A stretch of 64,000 bases of DNA, taken from Oopsacas minuta. Its lineage: Eukaryota; Animalia; Porifera. Under the pieces are notes generated by a model that searched no databases, was not told the DNA's origin, and saw only the letters and a program-made list of their open reading frames with translations. Where the stretch lies: the NCBI GenBank assembly GCA_024704765.1, contig JAKMXF010000353.1, forward strand, positions 62,001-126,000. The letters run 5' to 3'. The translations under genes and the position numbers were made by a program. Below are positions 4,001 through 39,346 of the stretch, piece by piece (positions within the stretch are counted from its first letter, which is position 1; each line of letters opens with the position of its first letter).

Positions 4001-7000
4001 GGCTACTGAATGTACGCAGAGTTCAGTTGCTGGAGAAAGTCCGTAACATACGTGAGGAGAAGAGAGCCTCAGAGATCACGAGACAACAAATGATCGACCA
4101 ACTGATAGAAGCACAGGTACACCTCCAAGAAGACATAAGAGAAAATCCCCTCCAGTCGATGCACGAGAGAATTGTACGAGAAATGGAGGACAAATTACGA
4201 GACCTGCAAAATAATATCCCCGTAGAGACCCGATTAAAGTGGAAGTGTGACACACGTGACCTAGAAACGAGCATTTCCCGTCTAGGAGAGATTGTACTTG
4301 TACCAGTAGGAGTACCAGATTATGCTAAATTCCAAACTTCCACTGTTGCTACTGGGGAGGAAGGTATAGGTCCTGGCGAGTTGATTGCTCCATACGGTGT
4401 AGCTATACATGAAGATACACACCAAATATTCGTAGCTAATAGTTGCCATAACAGAGTAGAGATATTCTCTGATACAGGAGAGTACCTCAATCAGCTGGGT
4501 GTAGGACAGGAGTATACGCCATACGGTATAGCTATACACAGAGAGAATGTGTATGTCAGCTACGTGGGAGATCACACTATTAACCAATTGACACTAACTG
4601 ACATGAGTATTGTTAGGAAGATAGGAGGTAAGGGATCAAACAACGGACAATTCAAATATCCTAGACAACTAACAACAGATCCCATTGGTCACGTGTTTAT
4701 AGCAGATGGTGGTAACAACAGAATCAGTATACACGACACAGACCTGAACCATCTCCGTAACATTACTCATCAGTCAATGTCAGGACCAGTTGATGTTAAA
4801 GTGTCACGTGACCGCGTGTACGTACTGTGTCCATCTAACAACCCGTGTATGCACGTGCTAACCCTAGAGGGAGACAAGCTACACTCCCTCATTACCAAAG
4901 GACAAGGAATGGATGTGTTATGCCCTGTCTTCTTCTGTCTAGATCCACTTAACAACTTTGTTATTAGCGATAGATACTCTCACTCAATTCGGGTATTCTC
5001 TCCAGAAGGCAATCTCCTACACACTATAGGAACAGAGGGACACCAACAAGGAATGTTCTATAAACCCCAAGGAATAGCTATAACTCCAAACGGGAGATTA
5101 GTTAGTGTATCAGGGAATGAGAACTACCCTCTACAAATATATTACTAATTTGTTTGTTAGTTTGTTTGTTGTTATTTATTTAATTAAAACTCACACTTTT
5201 CTGGTTTTCCAACTTCTTTTCATTAATCTTTTCCGTGTTAAAATATAATTGTCTTATTTTAGACTTAACGTGTTGGTATTTAACATTCCTTTGCATACGT
5301 TTGGTTGCTAGTTGAGTTGCACACACACTTGTTACTAAAGATGGAAAATTTGTTGTTTTACCCAAACATTCCATTCTCGAGGTGTGTTTCCAGGGAATTG
5401 TTGTTGTTGTTGATGTTGTCTTTCGCGAAATTGCTTGTTTTCCCGTTTTAGTTATGCGTGTTTTGCTAAGCGATCGGTTGCTATGGCAATGCTCTAGTTT
5501 AAACAATTCTGAGAATTCCTGTCCCTCTTTCAAATCTTCAAAATCTATAATTAGTAACAAATTAATATTTTCCGAGCAAAATATACTCAAATTTTGAATG
5601 AGAAATGTAGCCAGAAATTGCCCAATAGGGCTTAGACCAAGTACCCCTATGGGAACTAAAAACACCTTTTAGACATCTGTTAATGAGAAACTTGTTTCAG
5701 CTCCCCTAATGTCTATCTAAGCATGCAGCTGGGAAGGCAGCAATTCATGGAAAAACCCAATGACTCTACTTCTAAATACACTGAGTCCTCTCTAATTGTC
5801 CACCAGTGGTCAATAGGGTCCGAAACGGACAATTAGAGAGGACATACTGATGTTAATTAAGCGTGTTAAAGGAGGTCTGTGGATATAAATCACTATTATT
5901 CACCCGTTAGTTAGTAAATATATTGTGTAATTGAATTTCCAATAATGACACTATTCATGTGACAGATAAACTTGATGCGGGCGGTGGAGCTGAAACAAGT
6001 TTACAACCAACAGTGGCCCTTGTATAACTTACAATTTTGTGGCAGTTGAGCATTCTCCAATTCAATTAATAGCTCATTTTTGGCGGGTAACTTAAATCTG
6101 TCACGTGACCGAATACAGCTAACAGCTGATTTAGGAATTGAGGTGTCAATCCTTGATTTTGCGGCTGTTATTCTCTTAGTGTGATTAGCCATGTGAGAAT
6201 CTATCAGCTGATGTGTATATTTGTTGTATGCGACAGGTGTGAAAGGATTCATTTTCAGTTTAAGTTGTTCATCTTTGGAAATTGGTCTCATTCGTATTTG
6301 CGGCATTTTTGTAAAAACTAAAATATAGATTTGGGAAAAGCTGCTTTAATATGAATTATTCTCCCAGACCGGACCAGGGAGAGTAACCTCACCCCCCAGA
6401 GGGGATTCACAATACATATGTTCACCTGCTGTAATATCCTAAAAATATTAAAATAATCCTACATTCCATTCTACTAATAATAGAACAAGCTAATTAACCA
6501 ATCAATTCTAAGCATTTACTTCCTATCATTTCTCTATACGTTTCCGCTTGTTCAATTTCTTCAGAAACCCTGCATTCTGACTGGTCAGGTAGACACATGC
6601 TCTTCTCACAGCTGTTTCAGTCAGTCTAGGCCTATAATGACGTTTCTTTAGAATTTTACGGATCGACTTGTAGACCGCTCTTCTGTTTTTGTTTAGACGG
6701 ATTCGAGTGTGCATCGTTTTGGGACGTTTGGAATGTTTAGGTCGTTTGAGTGACAACACGATTCCACCTTCGGAATGTGGTTTGATACCAATAGTCTTCC
6801 TTGGGACGCTGCCACTGAATTTCTGTGAGTGTTTGTTAGTTAAATTATTGGGTTCTTTTGAAAATCGGAATTTTCCACTTTGAACAATAAATTTAGAGTT
6901 TCTACGTAGAATACTCCATTGTACGTCTTGAGACATTTTATGCTAATTCAGAAATTGGGATTTGAATTACAATAAACATTTAACACCTGTCATATCTGAG

Positions 7001-8338: not shown

Positions 8339-11300
8339 TCACACAACATCAATGCTAAATGGACTCCCATAAATGTGTCCTGGTTCATCTTCATCACCCC
8401 ATAATAGTTCTAATATATAGTTCCCTTTCTCTGTAGCTACAAATGAAACTGACATTGTGCCATCTTCATTTTTCATTAAGGACATTTCTGCTTTAGTTCT
8501 GCCTGATAATCTGGCACGTAGAGGCCCAGGTCCTGCCCCCTCTCCTAATAAATTGTAATGTCTCAGAAAGGTGTTATAATGTGTATATTCAATTAAATTA
8601 TAGATAAACCCTCGAATCTGATAGGGTGACACATTTTGACACCAATCTCAGAGAGTTGAGAGATATCGTTTAGAAATTATAACAAGTTCCTAGATACGAA
8701 ATACTCCACAAATATGCACAGTTTCAAGTTTGTAACTCTTATAAGTTCCTCAATAAATTCGAATAAACAAACAAACAAACAAATAAACTAACAACTAACC
8801 AGCTAATATTTTATAACTCGTCAGTTGGTTTACTTTAACTTCCTTCTCAAACCCAACAGCTGTAACTTTCTTCGTATCTCTAATAGCTATTCCTATCACA
8901 TGTGCAATGAATGGTGACCCGCTTATATGTTGTCCACCCCATGTAGCTTGTATAGTATAGTCCCCCGGGGCAACAGGAAGGTATTTCACCTTCATGACAC
9001 CGTCTGAAGGGGTGATAACTATTGGGCCAGCTGGGTAGGGTCCTAGTACAGACACGGATAGCGGACCTGGTCCTGCATCTTCATCAATGTGTACCTAAAC
9101 AGTTAACAAAAACATAAATAGAAGTGTTTTTTTGAGGCTATATTAAATAATTAATACAAACCTCGAATTCTGCGGGAACATTGACCTCTCCTTGGACAAT
9201 TCCGTCCCCTGTAGTGGTACATAAGGTCCCGTCAGACACCCTACTCTCTCCTAGCACCTCAACACCCATGGGGAATCCTGGTATATCACAATCTCCCCAT
9301 CTGAGATGGATATCATAGTGTCCAGCGTCTCTGTAAAAACGAATAAGATAATTTCCTTTACTACACTACAGTATCCATGGTAACAATATGGATCCCATGG
9401 GGCAACTATATGTAAGTCAGTGGGTCTGTTTCATGGGAAATTGGTCTACTCAATGGGACCATATTGGACAATGGATAGTCTACTGTCGTCAGTGGTCATA
9501 TCCATGTTCAGTTAAATATGTATCAAGTATCCATAGTCCACTAATACAATTCTAACCTGCATGTATATGTAACGGTAATACTAGAATCCTCCGCTTCCTC
9601 TGCAACTATCCTTGGCTTCGTTGGCCCAGCTATCTTTATAGACAGAGGGCCAGCACCCGCGCCTGAGATAGGAATAACCTGGATACGAAGTGGTTCATTG
9701 GTATTTCCTCCTTTCAAACCATCACCTTCTAATTTGAGCTTTGAAACATCATTTTTGGTTTCTCCACCAATATTGACAAGGAATGGCGATCCTACAGATC
9801 CATCATCCATGGTTAATTTTCTTATACTCACATAGGAGGAGGAAATTTTTGCGAAAACAGTAGCCTATATCTGAAATTATAATTAGCCAGAGGTGTGAAA
9901 ATATGATTAATCATATTTGGTTCAGTTTACCACAAAAAAACACCATTTATCAGCTGGCATAAAGTGTCGGTATATGTATGAAGGTGTGAAAATATACATG
10001 TATAAATTTACATACCAGCTATATGAGCTTCTGCCCAGATAATCTTAACCTTATACTGTCCAGGTGAAGTTGGATGGTAGCTGACATAAATTATCTTATC
10101 CTCTTCTATCATTTCTATCGGTTCAGCTTTGCTTGGACCAAGAATATGCACTCTTAGACGAGCGACTACTGCCTCTGGACCACACCGTATGACAAAGTTA
10201 CATGTTTCACCTGTAAACAAAATAATAAACAACAATAAATCACATTATTAGCCATACATAATATCAAACCCCTCCAGTCTGATTGGTGAATACATTTTGT
10301 CACCTTTTCGCAGGGTTGTGTGAATATTTCCGTTAGATATTTATAAATTTCAAAATGACACCATTTTCACACATACACGTGCCAAATTTTAGCCTCACCC
10401 CTTGCTGGGGTGTTAAGTTATATCTTTTTAAAATATGAATATTTTATCACCTGTATTTCCACTAATAAGCCCCATTCCATCAGCTGTACATTTGTCAGTA
10501 AACTCAGCAAAATCCACTTGGTTATAGTAAGGTGACTTAGGAATGTGTTGTCCTGCAACCTAGATACAGAAATGGAGAATTGACACGAATACTAATAGAC
10601 ACTGAATTCGTCCGCTCTATCCGGTGTTCGTATTATCGACTGTATGAAGAAATAAAGAGGTGTTAAGAACTGGAACTAAGTGATTAACGTACAGTAGACA
10701 TCGCTTAATAGGGTCGCTTTGGGACTATACATTTTTTGCCATATTAATCAGAGTCTACTGTATTTACAAAACAAAACACAAACACAAACACAAACACAAA
10801 CAACCTTAATTTCAATTGTGTATTCGCCAGCAACTTTAGGCGTAAACTCAACACGAATCCTGTCACCTGATTGGCTAATATCAGTAGAATTAGGCCCAGA
10901 TGGACCGATAACATTCACGGTTACATCAGAGGGGATCAAATCTGTTCCTGAGATTTGGAACCAAGTTTTCTCGCGTGTCCTCAGGGTTCCTGTGAGTCCG
11001 GGACCTTCGGCTTTGCATCGGTGACTCGTGCCGGCGTCCGCTGGAAGGGGTCCCTGAAGGTCTGACCCAGTAGCTACTTGATTAAGGTCAGAGAGGAGAT
11101 CATCTAATGAGCTTGCAGTCTCAGAAACGGGAGGGGGAATTGGTTTGGGTGGGGGAATAACTGCTGGAGGTGGAGGTTTATTCGGTGATTTGATTGGTTG
11201 AGAGGGATAGGCTGATCGCTCTGGGATAGGAGGGCCTATAAATAGGAGAAAATATATTAACTTTCCAAAGGTAATCCCGAGAAATTAGTAAAAGGTTAGG

Positions 11301-12211
11301 TAGTATGTTCCCATCACAAACTATTAACATACCAAGCAGTGTAGCTACTGGAGTTATAGTAGTACCCGTCAGTTTATTAGGTCCTCTTTCAAACTGTCTC
11401 TTGAGAGCTGAAACCGATATGAAACCTTCGGTATCCTGACCAGATGTAGCCATACCCCCTTGAGCACTTGCACGACCTATAGCCCGTGCTTTTTCAGTCT
11501 TAGAGGCCACGCGGGGGGGCGAAACCTTACTGGATTTGACATTTACTGTAACTCCTTTGTGTGGAGGCTTAGGAGGGGGATTAGAGAGGACATCAGATGG
11601 TGGAGGAGGGGGCAGATCCTCGAGCTTGTTAGGTGACCCTAAAATCAAAATCTCAAATAACCGTTCGTGAAGAATATTTAAAGTAAATAATCGTGTTATA
11701 CATTTGAAAGTGTCAGAATCGAATTATACGTCCCTGATTACCCTCATTAGCAAGTGGAAGCTAATCTCTAGGATAATTTTGAAATATTTACAAAAAGGTG
11801 TGAAAATATGATTAATCATATGATAAATGTGTGTATAAGCACTGAATACAGTGTATTGACCAATAGAATTGCAGTCCATATGCACTCCATCAGAATCAAT
11901 TTTATGCTTTTATGGCTAATTGCCAAAACCTATAATCTGATTGGGCAAAATATGTGTAAGATATTGCTTAAAATGAAAATTATAATCCATCAACATATGT
12001 ATATGTAAATTTGTTGTTATTTACCTTTAGAGAAGGTGACAACACTCTCAAACATATCACTCTGGTCAGGTGCGGGAGGGAGATCAAAGGAATCTAACAG
12101 CTCATCAGAGGGTGCGGGAGGAGGGGGCGGGGGGTCTGAAAAATCTTGTCCTATCATTTCTAGCTCAGCTAGGAGTTTCTCTGTTTCTGTGCCTAAGTCA
12201 CTTTCTGTCAT
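8339..12211 (-). CDS. 710-aa protein: proline-rich N-terminus with LD-type motifs plus five filamin (Ig-like) repeats and no CH actin-binding domain; exons 12211-12025, 11638-11333, 11235-10805, 10559-10451, 10210-10016, 9791-9557, 9330-9162, 9094-8800, 8544-8339
   Basis: Nine GT-AG exons total 2133 nt in frame. Filamin hallmarks include CKAEGPGL, VEFTPKVAGEYTIEIKVAGQHIPKSPY, YHPTSPGQYKVKIIWAEAHIAGSPF and YLPVAPGDYTIQATWGGQHISGSPF. An AG at about 12218 suggests a further upstream exon may exist. Confidence 0.85.
10690..10762. mobile_element. Tiny TA-flanked MITE with CAGTAGAC terminal inverted repeats, in a filamin-gene intron
   Basis: TACAGTAGAC (10690-10699) ... GTCTACTGTA (10753-10762); related copies near 2395-2470 and 24730-24841. 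Confidence 0.75.
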
Positions 12212-13186: not shown

Positions 13187-13642
13187 TCAAATCCAGACAG
13201 GATAATTCCTCTGCTTTGGTAGAATACCAGTTTTGACTCCGGCGTCTTTCCATGCTAGTATGATCTTATCCAACACCTTTCTTGTAGCTTCCTGACACTC
13301 AATCGGGACAAATACCCCTGATTCATATTCGCATACTCCATTCACAATCCTGAAAGCGTCCCCAACGACATTATCCGGTATGACTTCAAAATCAAACAAG
13401 TAATAAAACGCGAGACGATGAAGGTCCCCGCCAAATTTTTCGGGCCCTTCCATCTGCATAAGGGTATTTACGTCCATCAAGGCCGTGTAGCCTGATTTAC
13501 ACTTACGGCCGTTTAGAAACCACTGTTTCTGACCATTAATCTCATATACGATACATCCAACATATGAATTGTCCGAATTGAAGCTGTGAGAAGCACATGA
13601 GAGATGCATAGTGTCAAGTGGCTTTTCTGGGCATTCAGCCAT
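13187..13642 (-). CDS. Intronless 151-aa protein of unknown function
   Basis: Real ATG with a TATATAAATATATA box just upstream, protein-like composition, GC higher than the flanks; no family recognised. Confidence 0.7.
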   Translation of the reverse strand: MAECPEKPLDTMHLSCASHSFNSDNSYVGCIVYEINGQKQWFLNGRKCKSGYTALMDVNTLMQMEGPEKFGGDLHRLAFYYLFDFEVIPDNVVGDAFRIVNGVCEYESGVFVPIECQEATRKVLDKIILAWKDAGVKTGILPKQRNYPVWI

Positions 13643-17671: not shown

Positions 17672-19909
17672 CTAATTTTCACTGTCCTGTCTTTGTTCCT
17701 CGGATAACCGTGCTTCCAATGCTGCCATGTCTTTCATTAGCGTTTCCAGATTCTCTTTCAAATGAATATTTTTCGTCATCTCTTCCTCAAGGGCCCTTTG
17801 AACTTTACGGAACGATTCGTCTTTGTACTCGTCGTCTTCGGGTATTACGAAATTCAAAAGTTTTCTAGAGACAGATTTATTAGGAGTTGGGCTAGTAACC
17901 TTAGGATTTAAATCTGCTTTATGACTGACAACATATGTCTTAATTATGGATTCCTTTCGTAGCAAATCGTTATTAAGGGCGGAATTTGAATCTTCTAAGT
18001 GGCTGCATTTTTCTTCAAGAATCCATTTCTGTTGCTGAATGGTTGTAAGTCTATCGATCAAATCCTTGGTCTCTTCTTGTATAGGAGTCTCATTGAGGGT
18101 CAAATTGGAGCTGGATTTATTCCAGGACAGAGCGCTGTCACAATTCCGTCCAATCGACACGGACTCTTGCTCGTCGCCCATACTCTCTGTAAAACTTGTC
18201 TGTCTTAGCTCGCTCATTTGTTCTTGGAATTTCTGGCAACGTTTTTGTTCATGTAAAAGTTGCTTTTTGAGTTCTTTTATCATTAAAAGATTTCTCTTTT
18301 CTCCGATTCTGAAACTTAACTTCAGTTCTTCTTTCTCCTGACCGAATTTAAGAATGAATCTTTCCTTCTCATCTACAGTTTGTGACAATTCTGACACTTC
18401 TTCATTCAGAACTCCAACCTCCGATTCATGAATCGCCCTTACTTCTTTAATTTCTTTCTCTAAAACACTTTTCGTTTCTGAGATGCCATTTTCAAGGGAA
18501 GCGATTTTACTCTCCAATTCCTCTCTCTGAATTTCGAGTTTTTTGACAGTTCTCTCTTGGTTCAGACGAACCTCAAGTTGTTCCTTAAGGTCCCGGATTT
18601 GTGTTTCCAGTCGAACTCTTTCATCTTGGTATTCAGCAATCATAATCTCATTGGATCGATTTTTCTCATTCAATTTCCCGAATAAGTCCTCAATTCTAAT
18701 CTGGTTTTCAATGGATTGTTCGTCTAACATTGCCTTACGACTGTCAGCGAGTTTTTGAGCTTGCCCGTAATCACACTGCAATCTATGTAGGTCGCTATTT
18801 GCCTTAGAAATTTCATCTTGTAACACACCCACCTTATCAATATTACTTTTCAACTCGTCTTGGAGGGTTTGATTCTCTTCGCCTCGTTGGCTGAGGCTTT
18901 GACGTAATTTTTCAGTGTGTTCGATTGCTGATTTCAGTTTTTCATCTATCGTGTTTTTCTCGGTATTCAACGCGGCGATCGTTTCTGTCTCTTTTTTGGA
19001 ATCTCTTCGAAATTTTTGACGTTCGCTTTTTAGAGTTTCAAATTCTTTGACAGTTTCTGGGTCGACTAGCGCAACTTTTGAGCGCATTTTTTCTAATTCC
19101 TGTTCTAATGCAATTACTTTGCCGCTTGAATTTAGTGTAATTAGTTCTTGTTTCAAATCTGATTCGGTCAATTTTTCGCGGGAAATATTCAATTCTTTTT
19201 TCAGATTCTGAGTTTCAGTTTGAGAATTTTCTAGTTTCAGTTTCAGTTCATATTGAACTAATTCTTTCTCATTTTGCAGAGCTATAATTAGTTCTTGTTT
19301 ATGTTCAGTTTTTAACTCCAATTGTTTGACTTGTCCCTGCAATTCCGATACTAAATCGTCATATTTTTGTTTACTTTCAGTCAGCTGTTTAGTCAACACC
19401 CTATTCTCTTCAGTTTGTGTTGCGACTTTTAATTCCAATTCAGTGTTCCCTGTTGCTTCGGAATCGCCATCCTTTTGAAATGAACTTTTTAAGACCGCAT
19501 TTTCCGCTCTCAAATGCAATAATTCTTCCTCCAAAACTTTGAATTCCTCGACAGTACCTCGACCGTCTTTGGAAAGGCTCTTTTTCAATTTATCATTCTC
19601 CTCCATGGCATTGGCGAGCTCGTTCAGAAGGGTTTGATTCTGTTGTGTCGCGTTTTGTTCGAATTCTGTCACAGTAGCATGCATTCTATCGTAATCATCT
19701 TGTAACACCTGAACATCTTTAGCTTTCTTACTCCTACTGATCGCCCGATTAGCTCTCTCACACTCCCTGTCAAGCTGAGAAGTCTTTTCCTTCAACCCTT
19801 TGTTCTCTTCAGTTATTCGTACTATCTTATCTCTTAAATCATAGTTCTCAGTCCGTAGCTGTAACAGGTTCCCCTGCATACGCATCAATTCTTCTTCCTT
19901 CACTTCCAT
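17672..19909 (-). CDS. GRIPAP1: GRIP1-associated protein 1 (GRASP-1) homolog, intronless coiled-coil protein, 745 aa
   Basis: N-terminus EEELMRMQGNLLQLRTENYDL...AISRSKKAKDV and C-terminus RLTTIQQQKWILEEKCSHLE...LLRKESIIKTYV...LEEEMTKNIHL match the two conserved GRIPAP1 blocks. Confidence 0.87.
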   Translation of the reverse strand: MEVKEEELMRMQGNLLQLRTENYDLRDKIVRITEENKGLKEKTSQLDRECERANRAISRSKKAKDVQVLQDDYDRMHATVTEFEQNATQQNQTLLNELANAMEENDKLKKSLSKDGRGTVEEFKVLEEELLHLRAENAVLKSSFQKDGDSEATGNTELELKVATQTEENRVLTKQLTESKQKYDDLVSELQGQVKQLELKTEHKQELIIALQNEKELVQYELKLKLENSQTETQNLKKELNISREKLTESDLKQELITLNSSGKVIALEQELEKMRSKVALVDPETVKEFETLKSERQKFRRDSKKETETIAALNTEKNTIDEKLKSAIEHTEKLRQSLSQRGEENQTLQDELKSNIDKVGVLQDEISKANSDLHRLQCDYGQAQKLADSRKAMLDEQSIENQIRIEDLFGKLNEKNRSNEIMIAEYQDERVRLETQIRDLKEQLEVRLNQERTVKKLEIQREELESKIASLENGISETKSVLEKEIKEVRAIHESEVGVLNEEVSELSQTVDEKERFILKFGQEKEELKLSFRIGEKRNLLMIKELKKQLLHEQKRCQKFQEQMSELRQTSFTESMGDEQESVSIGRNCDSALSWNKSSSNLTLNETPIQEETKDLIDRLTTIQQQKWILEEKCSHLEDSNSALNNDLLRKESIIKTYVVSHKADLNPKVTSPTPNKSVSRKLLNFVIPEDDEYKDESFRKVQRALEEEMTKNIHLKENLETLMKDMAALEARLSEEQRQDSEN

Positions 19910-22694: not shown

Positions 22695-25600
22695 TTAGTA
22701 TTGAGGGTTTATGTCTCTACGGTAATGTTTTATATTCTGGAGAGCGCTCCTAGCGGCCTCCAACTCGCGTTCTTTTTTCGCGATTTCTGACATCATCTCG
22801 AGTTCCTTTTTGAACGCGTCACGATCGCCACTCGGGTTGTTCGGGTCCCCAATTGTCTCCATCGTCACTTTCGCCTCTAGGGCCGCGTCGACAAGCGTAT
22901 CGGTTGCTTTTTTAACTTCTAATCCTGCGCGTCGTAGCCGTAAATTCTTCTCGGAGTTCGGATCGGCTTTCACTCGACAGGCCATCAATAACTGTGCTGT
23001 ATGTTTCGCAATTGCCTTGGCAGAAGCTACTAGCCTATCTTGACTTTCTGGCACTGTACTTGTAACACACGCATTGGCTGCTTCACAAAGCTCCGAGGTC
23101 GAACGAGCGACCTGTTTGGCAGCACCCACGAGGCCCTCTGACCAAATACTATTCTCATCTACTACACCCGATTTCATCCGTCCTTGTTTAACTAACTCAT
23201 GCTGTGCGTCCGTGGCTGCTTGCACGAGCGCACGTGTAGCACGAGCTATCGCCTTCGCAGCGTGTAAGATCGCCTCCTCAAACTTCATCTCGCCACTCAA
23301 CTCTGGGAGATCACGAGAAATTGGTCGAGCTTCTGCCAATTTTTTAGCTGCCATATCAATAGCAGCAGCAGCTAACAGCAGCTCTCTCTCCGCCATAACA
23401 GCTGGATTGTCTGGGTGCGCGTATCCAAGATGTTCCTTGATGGCCTCTGCTACCTACACGGGGTGTTAATCAATTCCCTAGTTACTAGATAGGCATAAGG
23501 AATGCATACCTGTACTATTTCGGCAATACTATGCGCTACGTCATGTGATAAATTCCTCAATTGGGCCTGACTATCTTTCCTTCCAGTCCCACTCTTTACA
23601 AACTCTAGAAGAGCTGTATAATGAATTGCAGCCTCTCTGCCACTAGTTTGACACCTTGCCCTCAGTTCTGGGTTATCAACACCATGAGCTACTGATTTTA
23701 CAATTGGTAATAAGCTTGTAACTGCATTCCTTCCGTCATTAGCTGCTGCTGTCAATTCTTCTTGCTTCTGAGATCCTTGAAATATATGTGAGTTCATCTT
23801 ATGTTTTTGTTTGTTTGTTTGTTTGTTTACTTGTTTTTTTGATTGTTTGGTTGATTGTGTGTTTGTTTACTTGCTTGTTTGTTTGTATGCATGTATATTT
23901 GTTTGTATGTTTGTTAGTTTATTTGTTTTCCTGTTAATCATTTTGTTTGTTTACATGTTTACTAACCTGGTAATACAGCTCTAGCAGTTCTAGCAGTAGC
24001 CTTAGTAAGCTCTTTAGAACAATTCAACATTTCCTCAGGTGATCCTCTCTTAGTTGGCTGTGCTTTGGATTCATATTCCCCTAGAGATTGGGCAATAGCC
24101 TCAATAGCTGTCTCTAATGCTCTCTGACTTCGTCCTGCTTCGTCTTCTACGCTAGTTATAGTCTTCATTAGTGAGGTTACACTAGTTACCATACTCTTAG
24201 CTGCATCCTAATACAGATAAAGTATAACAGAATGGGTAGAGGGTCTTTTAAGAGAAATTGTGAGTTACATTTCCGACGCTCAATCAATGATAAATCATAC
24301 AAAACAATCTGAAAGTGGGGGCAACTACATCGTAAGGTTCCTTCAGCAACTTCCGGTTGCCTGTGTGCCCCAAATTATCCAGCTGATGGCAAAAGGTGTC
24401 AGGTGGATATTAGAACACAAATTGGTATTTATCCAAGAACAAATTCGAATACATTAAATTTACCTTTAACTTCAACATCTGTGCATCTGTCCTACTCTTC
24501 CCGCTAGCATTTTTCGTAGCCTCTAGTAAAGTTCCCATAGCTATAGCTACATCCTTAACCGCGTTCAGTAGAAGGATCTGGGCTTCTGGATCGTCTTCTG
24601 TCAAAGCCGAAGCGGCTAGCTTGGAATAGTCCGCGAGTTGTTGGACGTGTGTCTCACATTTGAGGGCAGTTTTTGATAGCTCATCCTAGAGAGTTATGGG
24701 AAAATGTATGAAATTCTCACCTAAATTCATACCCAGTAGACAACGCTTAATAGAGCGACCGGTTAATCGGGTCACTTGTCCAGAAATCGGATCAAATTGG
24801 CCTGGTCCCAATGTGACCATAGTCAGCAGAGTCTACTGTGCTACAAAATGTCGATTGAACTGAAGTCATATTTGTTGCGAAAAGTTATGCTAGAATTACG
24901 TAATTAGGATAATAACAGTCAAATATTTTCAAAGAAAATAAAATAACATTAAGTAACTATCAAAACAACAATAACAACAAATTTTACGAAACCCCAAGAA
25001 AAATATTATCTGTTTATCCTTTCCAGAACTGAAACTATGGACTTCACATATTATCGGGGTTTCGTATACAAATAATAGGTGTGAAAATGTGTAAACAAAA
25101 GTGTGAACTATGCAACAAACCTGTGTAGCCTGTACAGATGAAACGAGTCGCTTCGTTTCTTCCACCAACTTCTGACAACTCCCTAAAAGTCCTTCTTTAT
25201 GCTTACCGAAAGACTCTTTGCTTTCGGGATTCAGTGTCTTCGCATTAGCGAACATAACAGTAGTCTCAAGATCTCCAACTACTCCTTGGATTACTGATAT
25301 AGCATTGATACAGGCCTGTGTTCCTTTGGAGCCTGCTTGGAGTGCTGTCATTACCAAGTTTACCTGGAGATATGTTGGTGTGTATTATTTCATACTTTGT
25401 ATAACGACACACCAGTGCGTGTTAGAAGGTCAAGTTGTTTGTTAGTTTGTTTATTAGTTGTTTACTAACCTTCTCAATAACTCCCCTCACACTATTAGTA
25501 TGAGATTTCCTAGCTTGAGGGTCGTTAGGCAGATTAGAATAGATACTGGCGTGCTTAACAAAGTCTATACATTCACTACCCAGCTTAGCTACTGATCGTT

Positions 25601-37872: not shown

Positions 37873-39346
37873 TTAAAACTTCAACCAATCTTTTAAATAC
37901 AGACAACTATTAGGAGAAATATTACCTACATCTTGACACCTATCAATTAGCGAACACATAACACAAGGTGTGAAAGTAATACCAGCTGGTAACTGCTTTG
38001 TCAATTTAATTTCCTTAGCTCGATACTTAAATATCTCTGTTACACTCCCGTTGTCAAGAGGAATAACTAATATATCCAATTCAAGTTTGCCTTCATCATG
38101 TAAAGCTTGTAATACTAAATCAAGCCTTCCCTTGGTAACGCGAAAGGACAATGGAATGTGTGCGGCTTTCATAGCTAAAATATCTTCACTTGAGAAATAT
38201 TTATGTGTATTGTCTTTGAGCTGTCCAAGTAACAGTTTATGCATATGTAGGAATAACACGTCTAGCTCATCCATGGTTAATGGCTTTTCCCGATTAATGA
38301 GAGATGGATCAGGGTCGAAATTTGAAAGTAGGTAGACCTTGGATCGGACCCCTGTGACGTCAGGGAGTTTTATCGATTGTGCTAATCCCTGTTTCTCTAA
38401 ATATTTTAGAATCTTTGTAACCTAAATATAAATACAATCAACTCCTGTTATATCTGAGCTCAAGGGACCGTGATAATTACTTCGATATGCCCAATAGGAT
38501 ATATGTTACTTTGACGGTTTGTGACTGTATTCGACGAAGTAGGCGGCAAAACCTGGGGGGCGATGTCCGATTGGACCAATTATTGGACTCTCTGACACCA
38601 GCTGAAAAGGTGTAGAAATGGCATGACTAGATATCTAGAAATAATGTGGCCAAACAGTGATAAATGCCAAATTTCAACACGATAGCTCTCCCTTTTTAAT
38701 CTCCGTGTACAGCTCAACCTCGTCGGGACCTGTCAAAAGCGTCCGTATAATCTAGGTCCTTATACATAGCAGGATAGGACCGGCGAGACCAGAGGGACAA
38801 GTCTAGATAATCGAGGTTCTTACCTGTACTTGTGGCAGACTCGTTTTCCTTCTTACATCTATACTAACCATCCCTTTACCTTTAACAGATTCTAAAGTCT
38901 TATATACTAACATCTGTTCGACATCTAGTGAACGGAGCTCTGTATTTAGTTCCGCATTCAAGTTTATTATTTCTTTTAATCTGTTTTAACAAGTAAATAA
39001 TAAACTCCAACCCGACAAACTGTTAAAAAGGTGTGAAAATATGATTAATCTTATGATAAATAACAATTGAGTAACAACTAACAAGACAGCTTTACCTGTA
39101 TACCAAAGTTGACCCTTGTTTACAAAGTTCTAGTTTCCCATTCGCTAGTAGTTTATTTATGACTTTCATTCGGATGGTAGGGGCCAGATCTGGTTGATCC
39201 TCTCGTATGTGTCGCTCTGTGATTCCCTTGAGATTCTCGTGACACAATTCTAACACCCTTTTCTCTAGCATGTTTAGAATTTCAGGATTATCTTCTTGGA
39301 TTTCTGAGATTATCTCGTTTTTAAATGATATTTTTGCTACTGCCAT
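37873..39346 (-). CDS. POLR3F: RNA polymerase III subunit RPC6/C34, 318 aa; exons 39346-39096, 38980-38824, 38421-37873
   Basis: INKLLANGKLELCKQGSTLVYR, EQMLVYKTLE...KG, and the C-terminal Fe-S motif PCVMCSLIDRC...ISPNSCLYLKDWLKF; phases sum to 957 nt. Confidence 0.92.

What the first reader, a model, noticed from the sequence alone, without database searches (positions are those of the whole stretch)
8339..12211. Unfamiliar adhesion-adaptor architecture: paxillin-type LD motifs and polyproline joined to five filamin repeats
Seen: the N-terminal ~250 aa are low-complexity and proline-rich. They carry an exact LD consensus SSLDDLLSDL (11084-11107), LD-like TEKLLAELE and SDELLDSF, and an ISVSALKRQFE segment. 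Five filamin Ig repeats follow, with no CH or LIM domain. Established: LDxLLxxL motifs of paxillin-family proteins bind the FAK FAT domain, the vinculin tail and talin R8; paxillin normally ends in LIM domains; filamin repeats bind integrin beta tails. Inference: a paxillin/filamin hybrid that could bridge integrin tails to talin, FAK or vinculin, lying about 10 kb from the talin gene. I do not recognise this architecture.
Basis: partly seen in the sequence, partly recalled or inferred. Interest (0 to 1): 0.75.

Follow-up and report, generated by a model that had tools for sequence, protein, structure and literature searches.

The report
Sponge filamin-repeat protein with LD motifs
A glass sponge gene encodes a protein that joins paxillin-style and proline-rich docking motifs to five filamin repeats without filamin's actin-binding head; the gene is real and strongly conserved in related sponge genomes, but its proposed role as an adhesion adaptor is still only inferred.

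Summary
Window 8339-12211 (minus strand) is a nine-exon gene of about 710 aa in a genome that matches the glass sponge Oopsacas minuta. About 236 N-terminal residues are disordered and 19% proline. Five Pfam filamin repeats follow and end at the stop codon. One uninterrupted exon (exon 3) encodes both the exact LD consensus (LDDLLSDL, 11084-11107) and most of filamin repeat 1, so the fusion is not a splicing-model artefact.

The whole gene, with the same intron phases, is present in five other unnamed sponge assemblies. Synonymous sites are saturated. dN/dS is 0.07-0.13 for the disordered part and 0.03-0.06 for the repeats. The LD block, an N-terminal LD-like helix, LPPPP-type motifs and a 28-residue block around ISVSALKRQFE are invariant or nearly so. 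SDELLDSF is not conserved.

No CH or LIM exon belongs to the gene. Canonical paxillin and CH-bearing filamins lie on other contigs. An exhaustive search of 1.84 billion proteins found no relative outside these sponges.

The adhesion-adaptor function (LD-binding domains, Ena/VASP, integrin tails) is inference; no binding was tested. The talin neighbourhood is only partly conserved synteny. I rate it a new, lineage-restricted combination of known modules, of moderate interest. The scan noted this same stretch twice before.

The parts
12025..12211 (-). Exon 1 (start codon 12211-12209; ends in phase 1)
   Evidence: ORF and donor AAAG|GTAAA. The Met aligns in six genomes while the residues before it differ. 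An in-frame TAG lies three codons upstream.
12152..12190 (-). N-terminal LD-like amphipathic helix, TETEKLLAELEMI (residues 8-20). It has E+6/L+7 like the 'inverse' LD class.
   Evidence: E9, T10, E11, L13, L14, A15, E16, L17, E18 and I20 are invariant in six genomes. The inverse LD class (LPP SLTSILADLE, CCDC158 DLKQLLQELR) is described in PMC7703752.
12110..12145 (-). Acidic-flanked polyproline, DFSDPPPPPPAP
   Evidence: D23, F24 and five prolines are invariant.
12065..12085 (-). DLPPAPD, an LPPxP-type proline motif
   Evidence: L44, P45, P46, A47 and P48 are invariant.
12026..12061 (-). SDMFESVVTFSK, a conserved strand-like motif of unknown partner
   Evidence: S51, D52, F54, E55, S56, V57, V58, T59 and F60 are invariant. 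The reading as a filamin-Ig ligand strand is speculation from memory and was not tested.
11333..11638 (-). Exon 2 (phase 1 at both ends)
   Evidence: The acceptor TTTAG|G and a phase-1 donor are conserved in the orthologues.
11598..11624 (-). LEDLPPPPP, a candidate class I EVH1 (Ena/VASP) ligand
   Evidence: K4, L5, D7, L8 and P10-P13 are invariant in five genomes. An Ena/VASP-type EVH1 gene exists in the genome (L023). Binding was not tested.
11346..11429 (-). Conserved 28-residue block EGFISVSALKRQFERGPNKLTGTTITPV
   Evidence: 23 of 28 residues are invariant. AF2 predicts a short helix at residues 75-83 with low confidence. No Pfam, PDB or paralogue match.
10805..11235 (-). Exon 3. One open exon encodes the Pro-rich linker, the LD motif and most of filamin repeat 1.
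   Evidence: Translation. Filamin PF00630 at residues 70-143, E = 5e-9. Orthologous single ORFs P0001 and P0002 carry both parts.
11075..11128 (-). LD motif VSETASSLDDLLSDLNQV (core LDDLLSDL at 11084-11107)
   Evidence: 16 of 17 columns (residues 36-52) are invariant in six genomes, against 21 of 35 before and 6 of 19 after. AF2 predicts a helix at residues 44-51, with pLDDT below 50.
10515..11020 (-). Filamin repeat 1 (end of exon 3 and start of exon 4, with intron 3)
9769..10496 (-). Filamin repeat 2 (exons 4-6: 10451-10559, 10016-10210, start of 9557-9791)
9249..9744 (-). Filamin repeat 3 (exons 6-7: 9557-9791, 9162-9330)
8897..9227 (-). Filamin repeat 4 (exons 7-8: 9162-9330, 8800-9094)
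   Evidence: The best PDB match is human FLNA Ig19-21, E = 7.5e-22.
8339..8869 (-). Filamin repeat 5 and the stop codon (exons 8-9: 8800-9094, 8339-8544)
   Evidence: The best PDB matches are FLNA Ig19/21 and Ig17. Ig24 dimerisation repeats match more weakly.

Best explanation
Shown:
- This is a single-copy, nine-exon gene of about 710 aa in a glass sponge genome that matches Oopsacas minuta.
- It encodes a disordered N-terminal part of about 236 residues packed with conserved short motifs. These are an N-terminal LD-like helix, three proline motifs, a conserved SALKRQFERG block and one exact LD motif.
- This part is fused in frame to five filamin Ig repeats that end at the C-terminus.
- The gene lacks the CH actin-binding head of filamin and the LIM domains of paxillin.
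- It is under strong purifying selection along its whole length.
- It is detectable only in Oopsacas and five related sponge assemblies.

Inferred mechanism: a non-actin-binding scaffold.
- The Ig repeats most resemble the ligand-binding rod-2 repeats of human filamin A. They would clamp beta-strand peptides of receptor tails or other partners.
- The N-terminal motifs would recruit helical-bundle LD-binding domains (FAK FAT, talin R8, the vinculin tail and similar) and EVH1, profilin or SH3 proteins such as Ena/VASP.
- The protein would thus assemble actin-regulatory and adhesion factors at the sites where its Ig repeats dock.
For: Gene model: GT-AG introns with matching phases. Splice sites and phases are the same in five orthologues, and the start Met is conserved.

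Fusion in one exon.

Five filamin repeats. Every repeat best matches human FLNA Ig19-21 or Ig16-17.

Orthologues with all exons: L014, L015, L016 and L020. L013 lacks only exon 9.

Selection: pS is 0.45-0.78. dN/dS is 0.07-0.13 for the N-terminus and 0.03-0.06 for the repeats.

Motif invariance.

No CH on the contig. There is no conserved upstream coding sequence except a separate gene whose orientation differs between genomes. No LIM on the contig.

Single copy; the closest paralogous repeats are at most 41% identical.

Candidate partners are encoded in the genome: a FAT domain, an Ena/VASP-type EVH1, integrin beta tails and talin.

LD motif definitions and the inverse class: PMC7703752.
Against: - No binding, localisation or expression data exist. 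Every partner is extrapolated from short-motif resemblance.
- LDxLLxxL occurs 4 times in the window's six-frame translation against 0.42 expected.
- PMC7703752 notes that nuclear export signals and LD motifs overlap.
- AF2 gives the LD helix a pLDDT below 50.
- One LD-like motif (SDELLDSF) is not conserved.
- The last repeat is not specially similar to the filamin dimerisation repeat, so the oligomeric state is unknown.
- A spliced full-length protein could not be searched or folded here.
Confidence: 0.5

Rival explanations
1. The protein is a CH-less filamin paralogue that modulates filamin networks or filamin ligands, for example by competing for receptor tails. The conserved N-terminal helices serve partners other than LD-binding domains: nuclear export, self-association, or intramolecular masking of its own Ig repeats. 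On this reading the resemblance to paxillin LD motifs is convergent or incidental.
For: - The repeats are bona fide filamin repeats closest to rod 2.
- The LD consensus has low specificity.
- LD motifs and nuclear export signals overlap (PMC7703752).
- The conserved strand-like FESVVTF and GVTVNV segments could be Ig ligands.
- There is no sequence similarity to paxillin beyond the motifs.
Against: - The main motif matches the full ten-residue LD core, carries acidic residues at +1, +2 and +6, and lies in a disordered, proline-flanked setting like paxillin LD2.
- It is the most conserved block of the linker.
- Polyproline EVH1-type motifs occur alongside LD or LD-like helices in adhesion proteins such as zyxin, LPP and RIAM (own knowledge).
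Confidence: 0.35
2. It is an ordinary short filamin isoform. CH-domain exons lie further upstream and are spliced on in some transcripts.
For: An AG lies just upstream of the ATG (12219-12218), so an upstream exon joining there cannot be excluded from DNA alone.
Against: - None of the 48 CH matches in the genome lies on this contig.
- The 5.5 kb upstream hold only one conserved coding element. It is a 151-aa ORF whose orientation relative to the gene differs between genomes.
- The Met is conserved at the same position in six genomes, and an in-frame stop lies three codons upstream in the window.
- CH-bearing filamins are separate genes on contigs C33 and C365.
Confidence: 0.03
3. It is a gene-model artefact: two adjacent genes, a proline-rich gene and a filamin-repeat gene, were read as one.
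For: Exons 1 and 2 have no domain hit, and no transcript evidence was available.
Against: - Exon 3 alone encodes the Pro-rich linker, the LD motif and filamin repeat 1 in one open frame. The same holds in the orthologous single ORFs P0001 and P0002.
- The exon 1-2-3 junctions keep phase 1 and GT/AG in all genomes.
- Order and spacing are conserved in six genomes.
Confidence: 0.02

Closest known systems
Paxillin family (paxillin, Hic-5, leupaxin)
   Same: Both have a disordered N-terminus that starts with an LD-type helix within the first 20 residues, followed by a proline-rich stretch and a further LD motif. The main motif LDDLLSDLNQV is close to the consensus LDxLLxxL.
   Different: There are no LIM domains and no Pfam Paxillin match. 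Only one or two LD motifs are conserved, against four or five in paxillin. The sponge's true paxillin (LD motifs plus four LIM domains) is a separate gene on contig C266.
Filamins (FLNA/B/C, Drosophila Cheerio including its short CH-less FLN90 isoform, Dictyostelium gelation factor)
   Same: Both have tandem filamin/ABP280 Ig repeats that run to the C-terminus. The repeats here are closest to the ligand-binding rod-2 repeats Ig16-21 of human FLNA.
   Different: There is no CH-CH actin-binding domain and there are only five repeats. It is a separate gene, not an internal-promoter isoform. It has a motif-rich N-terminus that no filamin has. Similarity of the last repeat to the Ig24 dimerisation repeat is not marked.
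Zyxin / LPP / migfilin (FBLIM1)
   Same: These are proline-rich adhesion adaptors with ActA-type EVH1 ligands and an LD-like or NES helix (the LPP LD motif is shown in PMC7703752). Migfilin is a filamin partner.
   Different: Those proteins end in LIM domains and bind filamin. This protein carries the filamin repeats itself.
RIAM / lamellipodin and DLC1 (non-paxillin proteins with talin R8-binding helices)
   Same: RIAM has an amphipathic helix at the extreme N-terminus followed by polyproline EVH1 and profilin ligands. DLC1 has an LD motif outside the paxillin family.
   Different: There are no RA-PH domains (RIAM) and no RhoGAP, START or SAM domains (DLC1). There is no sequence homology beyond the motif pattern. 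This comparison rests on my own knowledge, not on a test here.
Palladin / myotilin family
   Same: Both combine proline-rich FPPPP-type motifs with Ig-fold domains in an actin-associated scaffold.
   Different: The Ig domains of palladin are I-set, not filamin-type. Palladin has no LD motif.

Membership tests
Filamin (canonical actin cross-linker) | N-terminal tandem calponin-homology actin-binding domain | tested here: not met
   PF00307 gives 48 matches in the genome and none on contig C353. No conserved upstream exon within 5.5 kb. The start Met is conserved.
Filamin (canonical actin cross-linker) | Tandem filamin/ABP280 Ig repeats (PF00630) | tested here: met
   Five repeats, from exon-wise Pfam hits with E from 7e-3 down to 4e-10. 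PDB matches to FLNA, FLNB and FLNC repeats reach E = 7.5e-22.
Filamin (canonical actin cross-linker) | C-terminal repeat that dimerises (Ig24 type) | tested here: inconclusive
   Repeat 5 ends the protein. It matches Ig19, Ig21 and Ig17 (E from 1e-17 to 1e-10) better than the Ig24 structures 1v05, 3cnk and 2eed (E from 2e-4 to 2e-3).
Paxillin family | Several N-terminal LD motifs (LDxLLxxL) | tested here: met
   One exact, invariant LD motif and one invariant inverse-type LD-like helix at the N-terminus. A third candidate is not conserved.
Paxillin family | Four C-terminal LIM domains | tested here: not met
   No LIM match on contig C353. The protein ends in filamin repeat 5. The canonical paxillin with four LIM exons is at C266:56600-59600.
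Paxillin family | Sequence similarity to Pfam Paxillin (PF03535) | tested here: inconclusive
   No match in the whole genome. The same search also missed the canonical paxillin gene on C266 and rang in no control genome, so it has little power. The exon-wise Pfam scan shows no Paxillin hit.
LD-motif proteins (functional class of Alam et al., PMC7703752) | Ten-residue core x-L-D-x-L-L-x-x-L-x in an accessible, helix-prone, non-structural segment | tested here: met
   The core is SLDDLLSDLN. It is flanked by proline-rich, low-confidence sequence and predicted as an isolated helix at residues 44-51.
LD-motif proteins (functional class of Alam et al., PMC7703752) | Binding to an LD-binding domain (FAT, talin R8, vinculin tail, GIT, parvin) | not testable with these tools
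   No complex prediction or binding assay is available. The partner domains are present in the genome.
Class I EVH1 (Ena/VASP) ligands | [FLWY]PPPP core with acidic flanks | tested here: met
   EDLPPPPPSD has an invariant K-L-x-D-L-PPPP. DLPPAPD is invariant. The consensus is from my own knowledge.
Class I EVH1 (Ena/VASP) ligands | Binding to an Ena/VASP EVH1 domain | not testable with these tools
   An Ena/VASP-type EVH1 gene exists (L023).

The most novel reading that the evidence does not exclude
Glass sponges evolved their own adhesion and cytoskeleton hub. Its filamin repeats dock on integrin or other receptor tails. Its LD helices and LPPPP motifs recruit talin, FAK or vinculin and Ena/VASP, so it does the jobs of paxillin-type and zyxin-type adaptors with a different folded module. 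It might be self-regulated by its own conserved strand-like motif (FESVVTF) occupying an Ig groove. This would be a lineage-specific rewiring of the integrin adhesome in animals with syncytial tissues.
Probability: 0.25. Interest if true: 0.65.

Novelty: new variant of a known kind. Interest (0 to 1): 0.45.

Why it matters
LD motifs have been confirmed in very few proteins outside the paxillin family (PMC7703752). Filamin repeats are normally tied to an actin-binding head. A strongly constrained protein that joins the two shows that the integrin-adhesion toolkit was recombined in an early-branching animal lineage with unusual syncytial tissues.

It also offers defined peptides and domains for direct tests of how old LD-domain and EVH1-ligand recognition is.

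If the motifs do not bind the expected partners, the gene is still a clean example of a disordered region under dN/dS of about 0.1, with partners yet to be found.

Tried and rejected
- Pfam on exons 1 and 2: nothing.
- PDB profile search with the exon 2 alignment: only a chance hit, E = 0.44.
- ESM Atlas with exon 2: best score 0.79 to a 'CRBG1 fragment' cluster, within the range that shuffled sequences reach, so discarded.
- Pfam Paxillin on the genome: no match, and the controls were silent, so uninformative.
- The first LIM candidates I examined for paxillin turned out to be PINCH (L010) and abLIM (L011).
- The first WH1 candidates were Homer (L018) and WASP (L019). VASP_tetra scored below its cut-off.
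- JGI metagenome scans with the exon 3 and exon 2 profiles: no relatives.
- Word-index searches with the exon 3 and exon 2 profiles returned only the same sponge assemblies.
- Paper searches for the architecture, for Oopsacas plus filamin, and for the sample name BUSC20-1 found nothing relevant. The Oopsacas genome paper does not mention talin, paxillin or filamin.
- The idea that repeat 5 is an Ig24-type dimerisation repeat was not supported.
- The idea that talin adjacency signals functional coupling was rejected, because the synteny is only partial.
- The spliced, joined protein was deliberately never submitted. All searches and folds were done exon by exon, by reference. Full-length homology search, full-length folding and peptide-domain complex prediction were therefore left out.
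Full report
**What is there**

The stretch 8339-12211 holds a minus-strand gene. I modelled it by hand from the sequence as nine exons:
- exon 1: 12211-12025
- exon 2: 11638-11333
- exon 3: 11235-10805
- exon 4: 10559-10451
- exon 5: 10210-10016
- exon 6: 9791-9557
- exon 7: 9330-9162
- exon 8: 9094-8800
- exon 9: 8544-8339

All introns are GT-AG and their phases fit. The product is about 710 aa: 704 in-frame residues plus six split codons. The ATG at 12211 has an in-frame TAG three codons upstream.

The genome (G000) has 61,460,524 bases in 365 contigs. This agrees with the published assembly of 365 scaffolds, about 61 Mb and 36% G+C (PMC10280926).

**Domains**

I scanned the protein exon by exon. 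Pfam Filamin (PF00630) matches exons 3, 5, 6, 7, 8 and 9, and together these make five repeats. Exons 1 and 2 match nothing.

Against solved structures, every repeat is closest to human filamin A Ig19-21 (2j3s) and Ig16-17. The best E-value is 7.5e-22. The last repeat runs to the stop codon but is not specially similar to the Ig24 dimerisation repeats.

The first 234 counted residues are 18.8% proline. AF2 on the exon alignments predicts isolated short helices in otherwise unstructured sequence, all with low confidence:
- the LD core, residues 44-51 of exon 3
- residues 46-59 of exon 2
- residues 75-83 of exon 2

**The fusion is real**

Exon 3 is one open frame. It encodes the proline-rich linker, the exact LD consensus (SSLDDLLSDL; core at 11084-11107) and about 80% of filamin repeat 1. 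The architecture therefore does not depend on any splice prediction.

**Orthologues and constraint**

I searched exon 3 with exhaustive HMMER against 1.84 billion representative proteins. Only four hits covered the LD part or exceeded 70% identity. All four are single-exon ORFs called on ENA assemblies. The other 60 hits were generic filamin repeats at no more than 44% identity. None of the 60 carries an LD-like motif, and only one (P0049) has a short YPPPP run. Word-index searches added one more assembly for exon 3 and one short exon 2 fragment on a further contig that I did not fetch.

I fetched five contigs (L013-L016 and L020). They hold the whole gene in the same exon order. From exon 3 onward the AG/GT sites and phases are identical. 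The exon 1-2-3 junctions keep phase 1.

Synonymous sites are saturated (pS 0.45-0.78), so these are well-separated species. dN/dS is 0.07-0.13 for the disordered N-terminal part and 0.03-0.06 for the repeats.

Motif conservation across the genomes:

| Motif | Conservation |
|---|---|
| Start Met | aligned in all six |
| TETE[KQ]LLAELE.IGQ | near-invariant |
| DF-x-x-x-PPPPP | near-invariant |
| LPPAP | invariant |
| SD[MI]FESVVTF | near-invariant |
| KL.DLPPPP | invariant |
| EGF[IV]SVS.L.RQFE.GPN.LTGTTITPV | near-invariant |
| PPV[ST]ETASSLDDLLSDLNQ | near-invariant |

The LD block is invariant in 16 of 17 columns. The linker before it is invariant in 21 of 35 columns, and the linker after it in 6 of 19.

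It reads SDDPLDL in L020.

I take them for relatives of Oopsacas because they share 70-91% exon identity, intron positions and neighbouring genes (RPL28e, an HSD3/SPATA7-like gene, NHL, a 745-aa coiled-coil gene).

**What it is not**

None of the 48 CH matches in the genome lies on this contig. In the 5.5 kb upstream, the only coding sequence conserved with the orthologous loci is a 151-aa ORF (13187-13642). Its orientation relative to the gene differs between genomes, so it is a separate gene. No LIM domain lies on the contig.

The related canonical genes sit elsewhere:
- paxillin, with LD-type exons followed by four LIM exons, at C266:56600-59600
- PINCH and abLIM
- CH-bearing filamins on C33 and C365

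The gene is single-copy. The nearest paralogous repeats are at most 41% identical, and exon 2 has no paralogue. JGI metagenome scans with the exon 2 and exon 3 profiles found nothing. I found no paper describing this architecture.

**How it probably works (inference)**

The main motif fits the ten-residue LD core, and the N-terminal helix fits the 'inverse' LD class with E+6/L+7. Both are defined in PMC7703752. EDLPPPPPSD and DLPPAPD fit class I EVH1 ligands (my own knowledge).

The genome encodes candidate partners:
- a FAT domain
- an Ena/VASP-type EVH1 protein
- integrin beta tails
- talin

The repeats resemble the ligand-binding rod-2 repeats of filamin A. I therefore read the protein as a scaffold without its own actin-binding domain. 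The Ig repeats would dock on beta-strand ligands such as receptor tails. The N-terminal motifs would recruit LD-binding helical bundles and EVH1, profilin or SH3 proteins.

Several points weigh against this reading:
- None of it is tested.
- The LD consensus alone is weak evidence: it occurs 4 times in the window's six frames against 0.42 expected.
- LD motifs and nuclear export signals overlap.
- The predicted helices have low confidence.

The main rival is that the helices serve other partners or mask the protein's own Ig repeats.

**Talin neighbourhood**

Talin's I/LWEQ exon is at 22698-23396, on the same strand and 10.5 kb upstream. An NHL gene, a coiled-coil gene, an MBL-like gene and the 151-aa ORF lie between. 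L020 keeps talin 6.5 kb upstream. L014 keeps the NHL and coiled-coil genes. L013 and L015 have an LRR/EGF gene upstream instead. I read this as decaying synteny, not functional linkage.

**Limits**

The joined protein was never submitted. Full-length homology search, full-length folding and LD-peptide/partner complex prediction were therefore left out. The word-index search also sees only proteins of similar length to each exon. The claim of absence outside these sponges rests mainly on the exhaustive exon 3 search.

**Verdict**

- Observation: confirmed.
- Interpretation: partly supported. The architecture is real, conserved and undescribed; the function is still hypothetical.
- Novelty: a new, lineage-restricted combination of known modules.
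- Interest: moderate.

Noticed in passing
window 13187-13642 (-): A 151-aa ORF with no Pfam match is conserved (38-47% identity by tblastx) next to the gene in L014 and L015. There it lies in the opposite orientation relative to the filamin-repeat gene, which indicates a small local inversion between species.
   Followed up: partly
L020:9105-9983: In this orthologous locus an NHL-repeat gene sits inside the 2052-nt intron 4 of the filamin-repeat gene. The same intron is 60-240 nt in the window and the other four loci.
   Followed up: no
L015:8929-9377: This species has an extra intron of about 440 nt inside exon 2, at ...AIG|RA.... ATAG|GT is repeated at both ends. It looks like an intron gain.
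   Followed up: partly
L013:6119-6620: Exon 9, the second half of filamin repeat 5, is not detectable after exon 8 in this assembly. An array of about ten Rab-type GTPase genes starts at 6602. This could be a truncated gene, a rearrangement or a misassembly.
   Followed up: partly
window 10770-10804 and the same intron in L013-L016 and L020: Intron 3 begins with a (GTT)n or (GTTT)n G/T-rich simple repeat right at or after the donor in all six genomes, even though synonymous sites are saturated. Similar G/T-rich runs follow the exon 8 donor and the stop codon in the window. This may be a general feature of these genomes or a splicing signal.
   Followed up: partly
window 38571-38594 (+): A second exact LDxLLxxL match (VRLDQLLDSLTPAEKV, then a stop) lies at the end of an open frame on the plus strand. 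I did not examine it further.
   Followed up: no
L012 (G000:C266:55800-62000), minus strand: The canonical Oopsacas paxillin has LD-type exons (NPLDILEQQMAALEAL, GLNDLMASLEDIK, GELDNIVGTLQKD) that are further from the LDxLLxxL consensus than the motif in the filamin-repeat protein.
   Followed up: partly
window 17672-19909 (-): An intronless 745-aa coiled-coil ORF with no Pfam match. A syntenic ORF of matching length lies upstream of the gene in L014 (729 aa) and L020 (745 aa); I did not compare the sequences.
   Followed up: no
L023 (G000:C66:319500-322800), minus strand: An Ena/VASP-type gene: EVH1 exons, then a charged Q/E/R-rich repeat and a PPPPP stretch. The Pfam VASP tetramerisation domain was not found above its cut-off anywhere in the genome.
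   Followed up: partly
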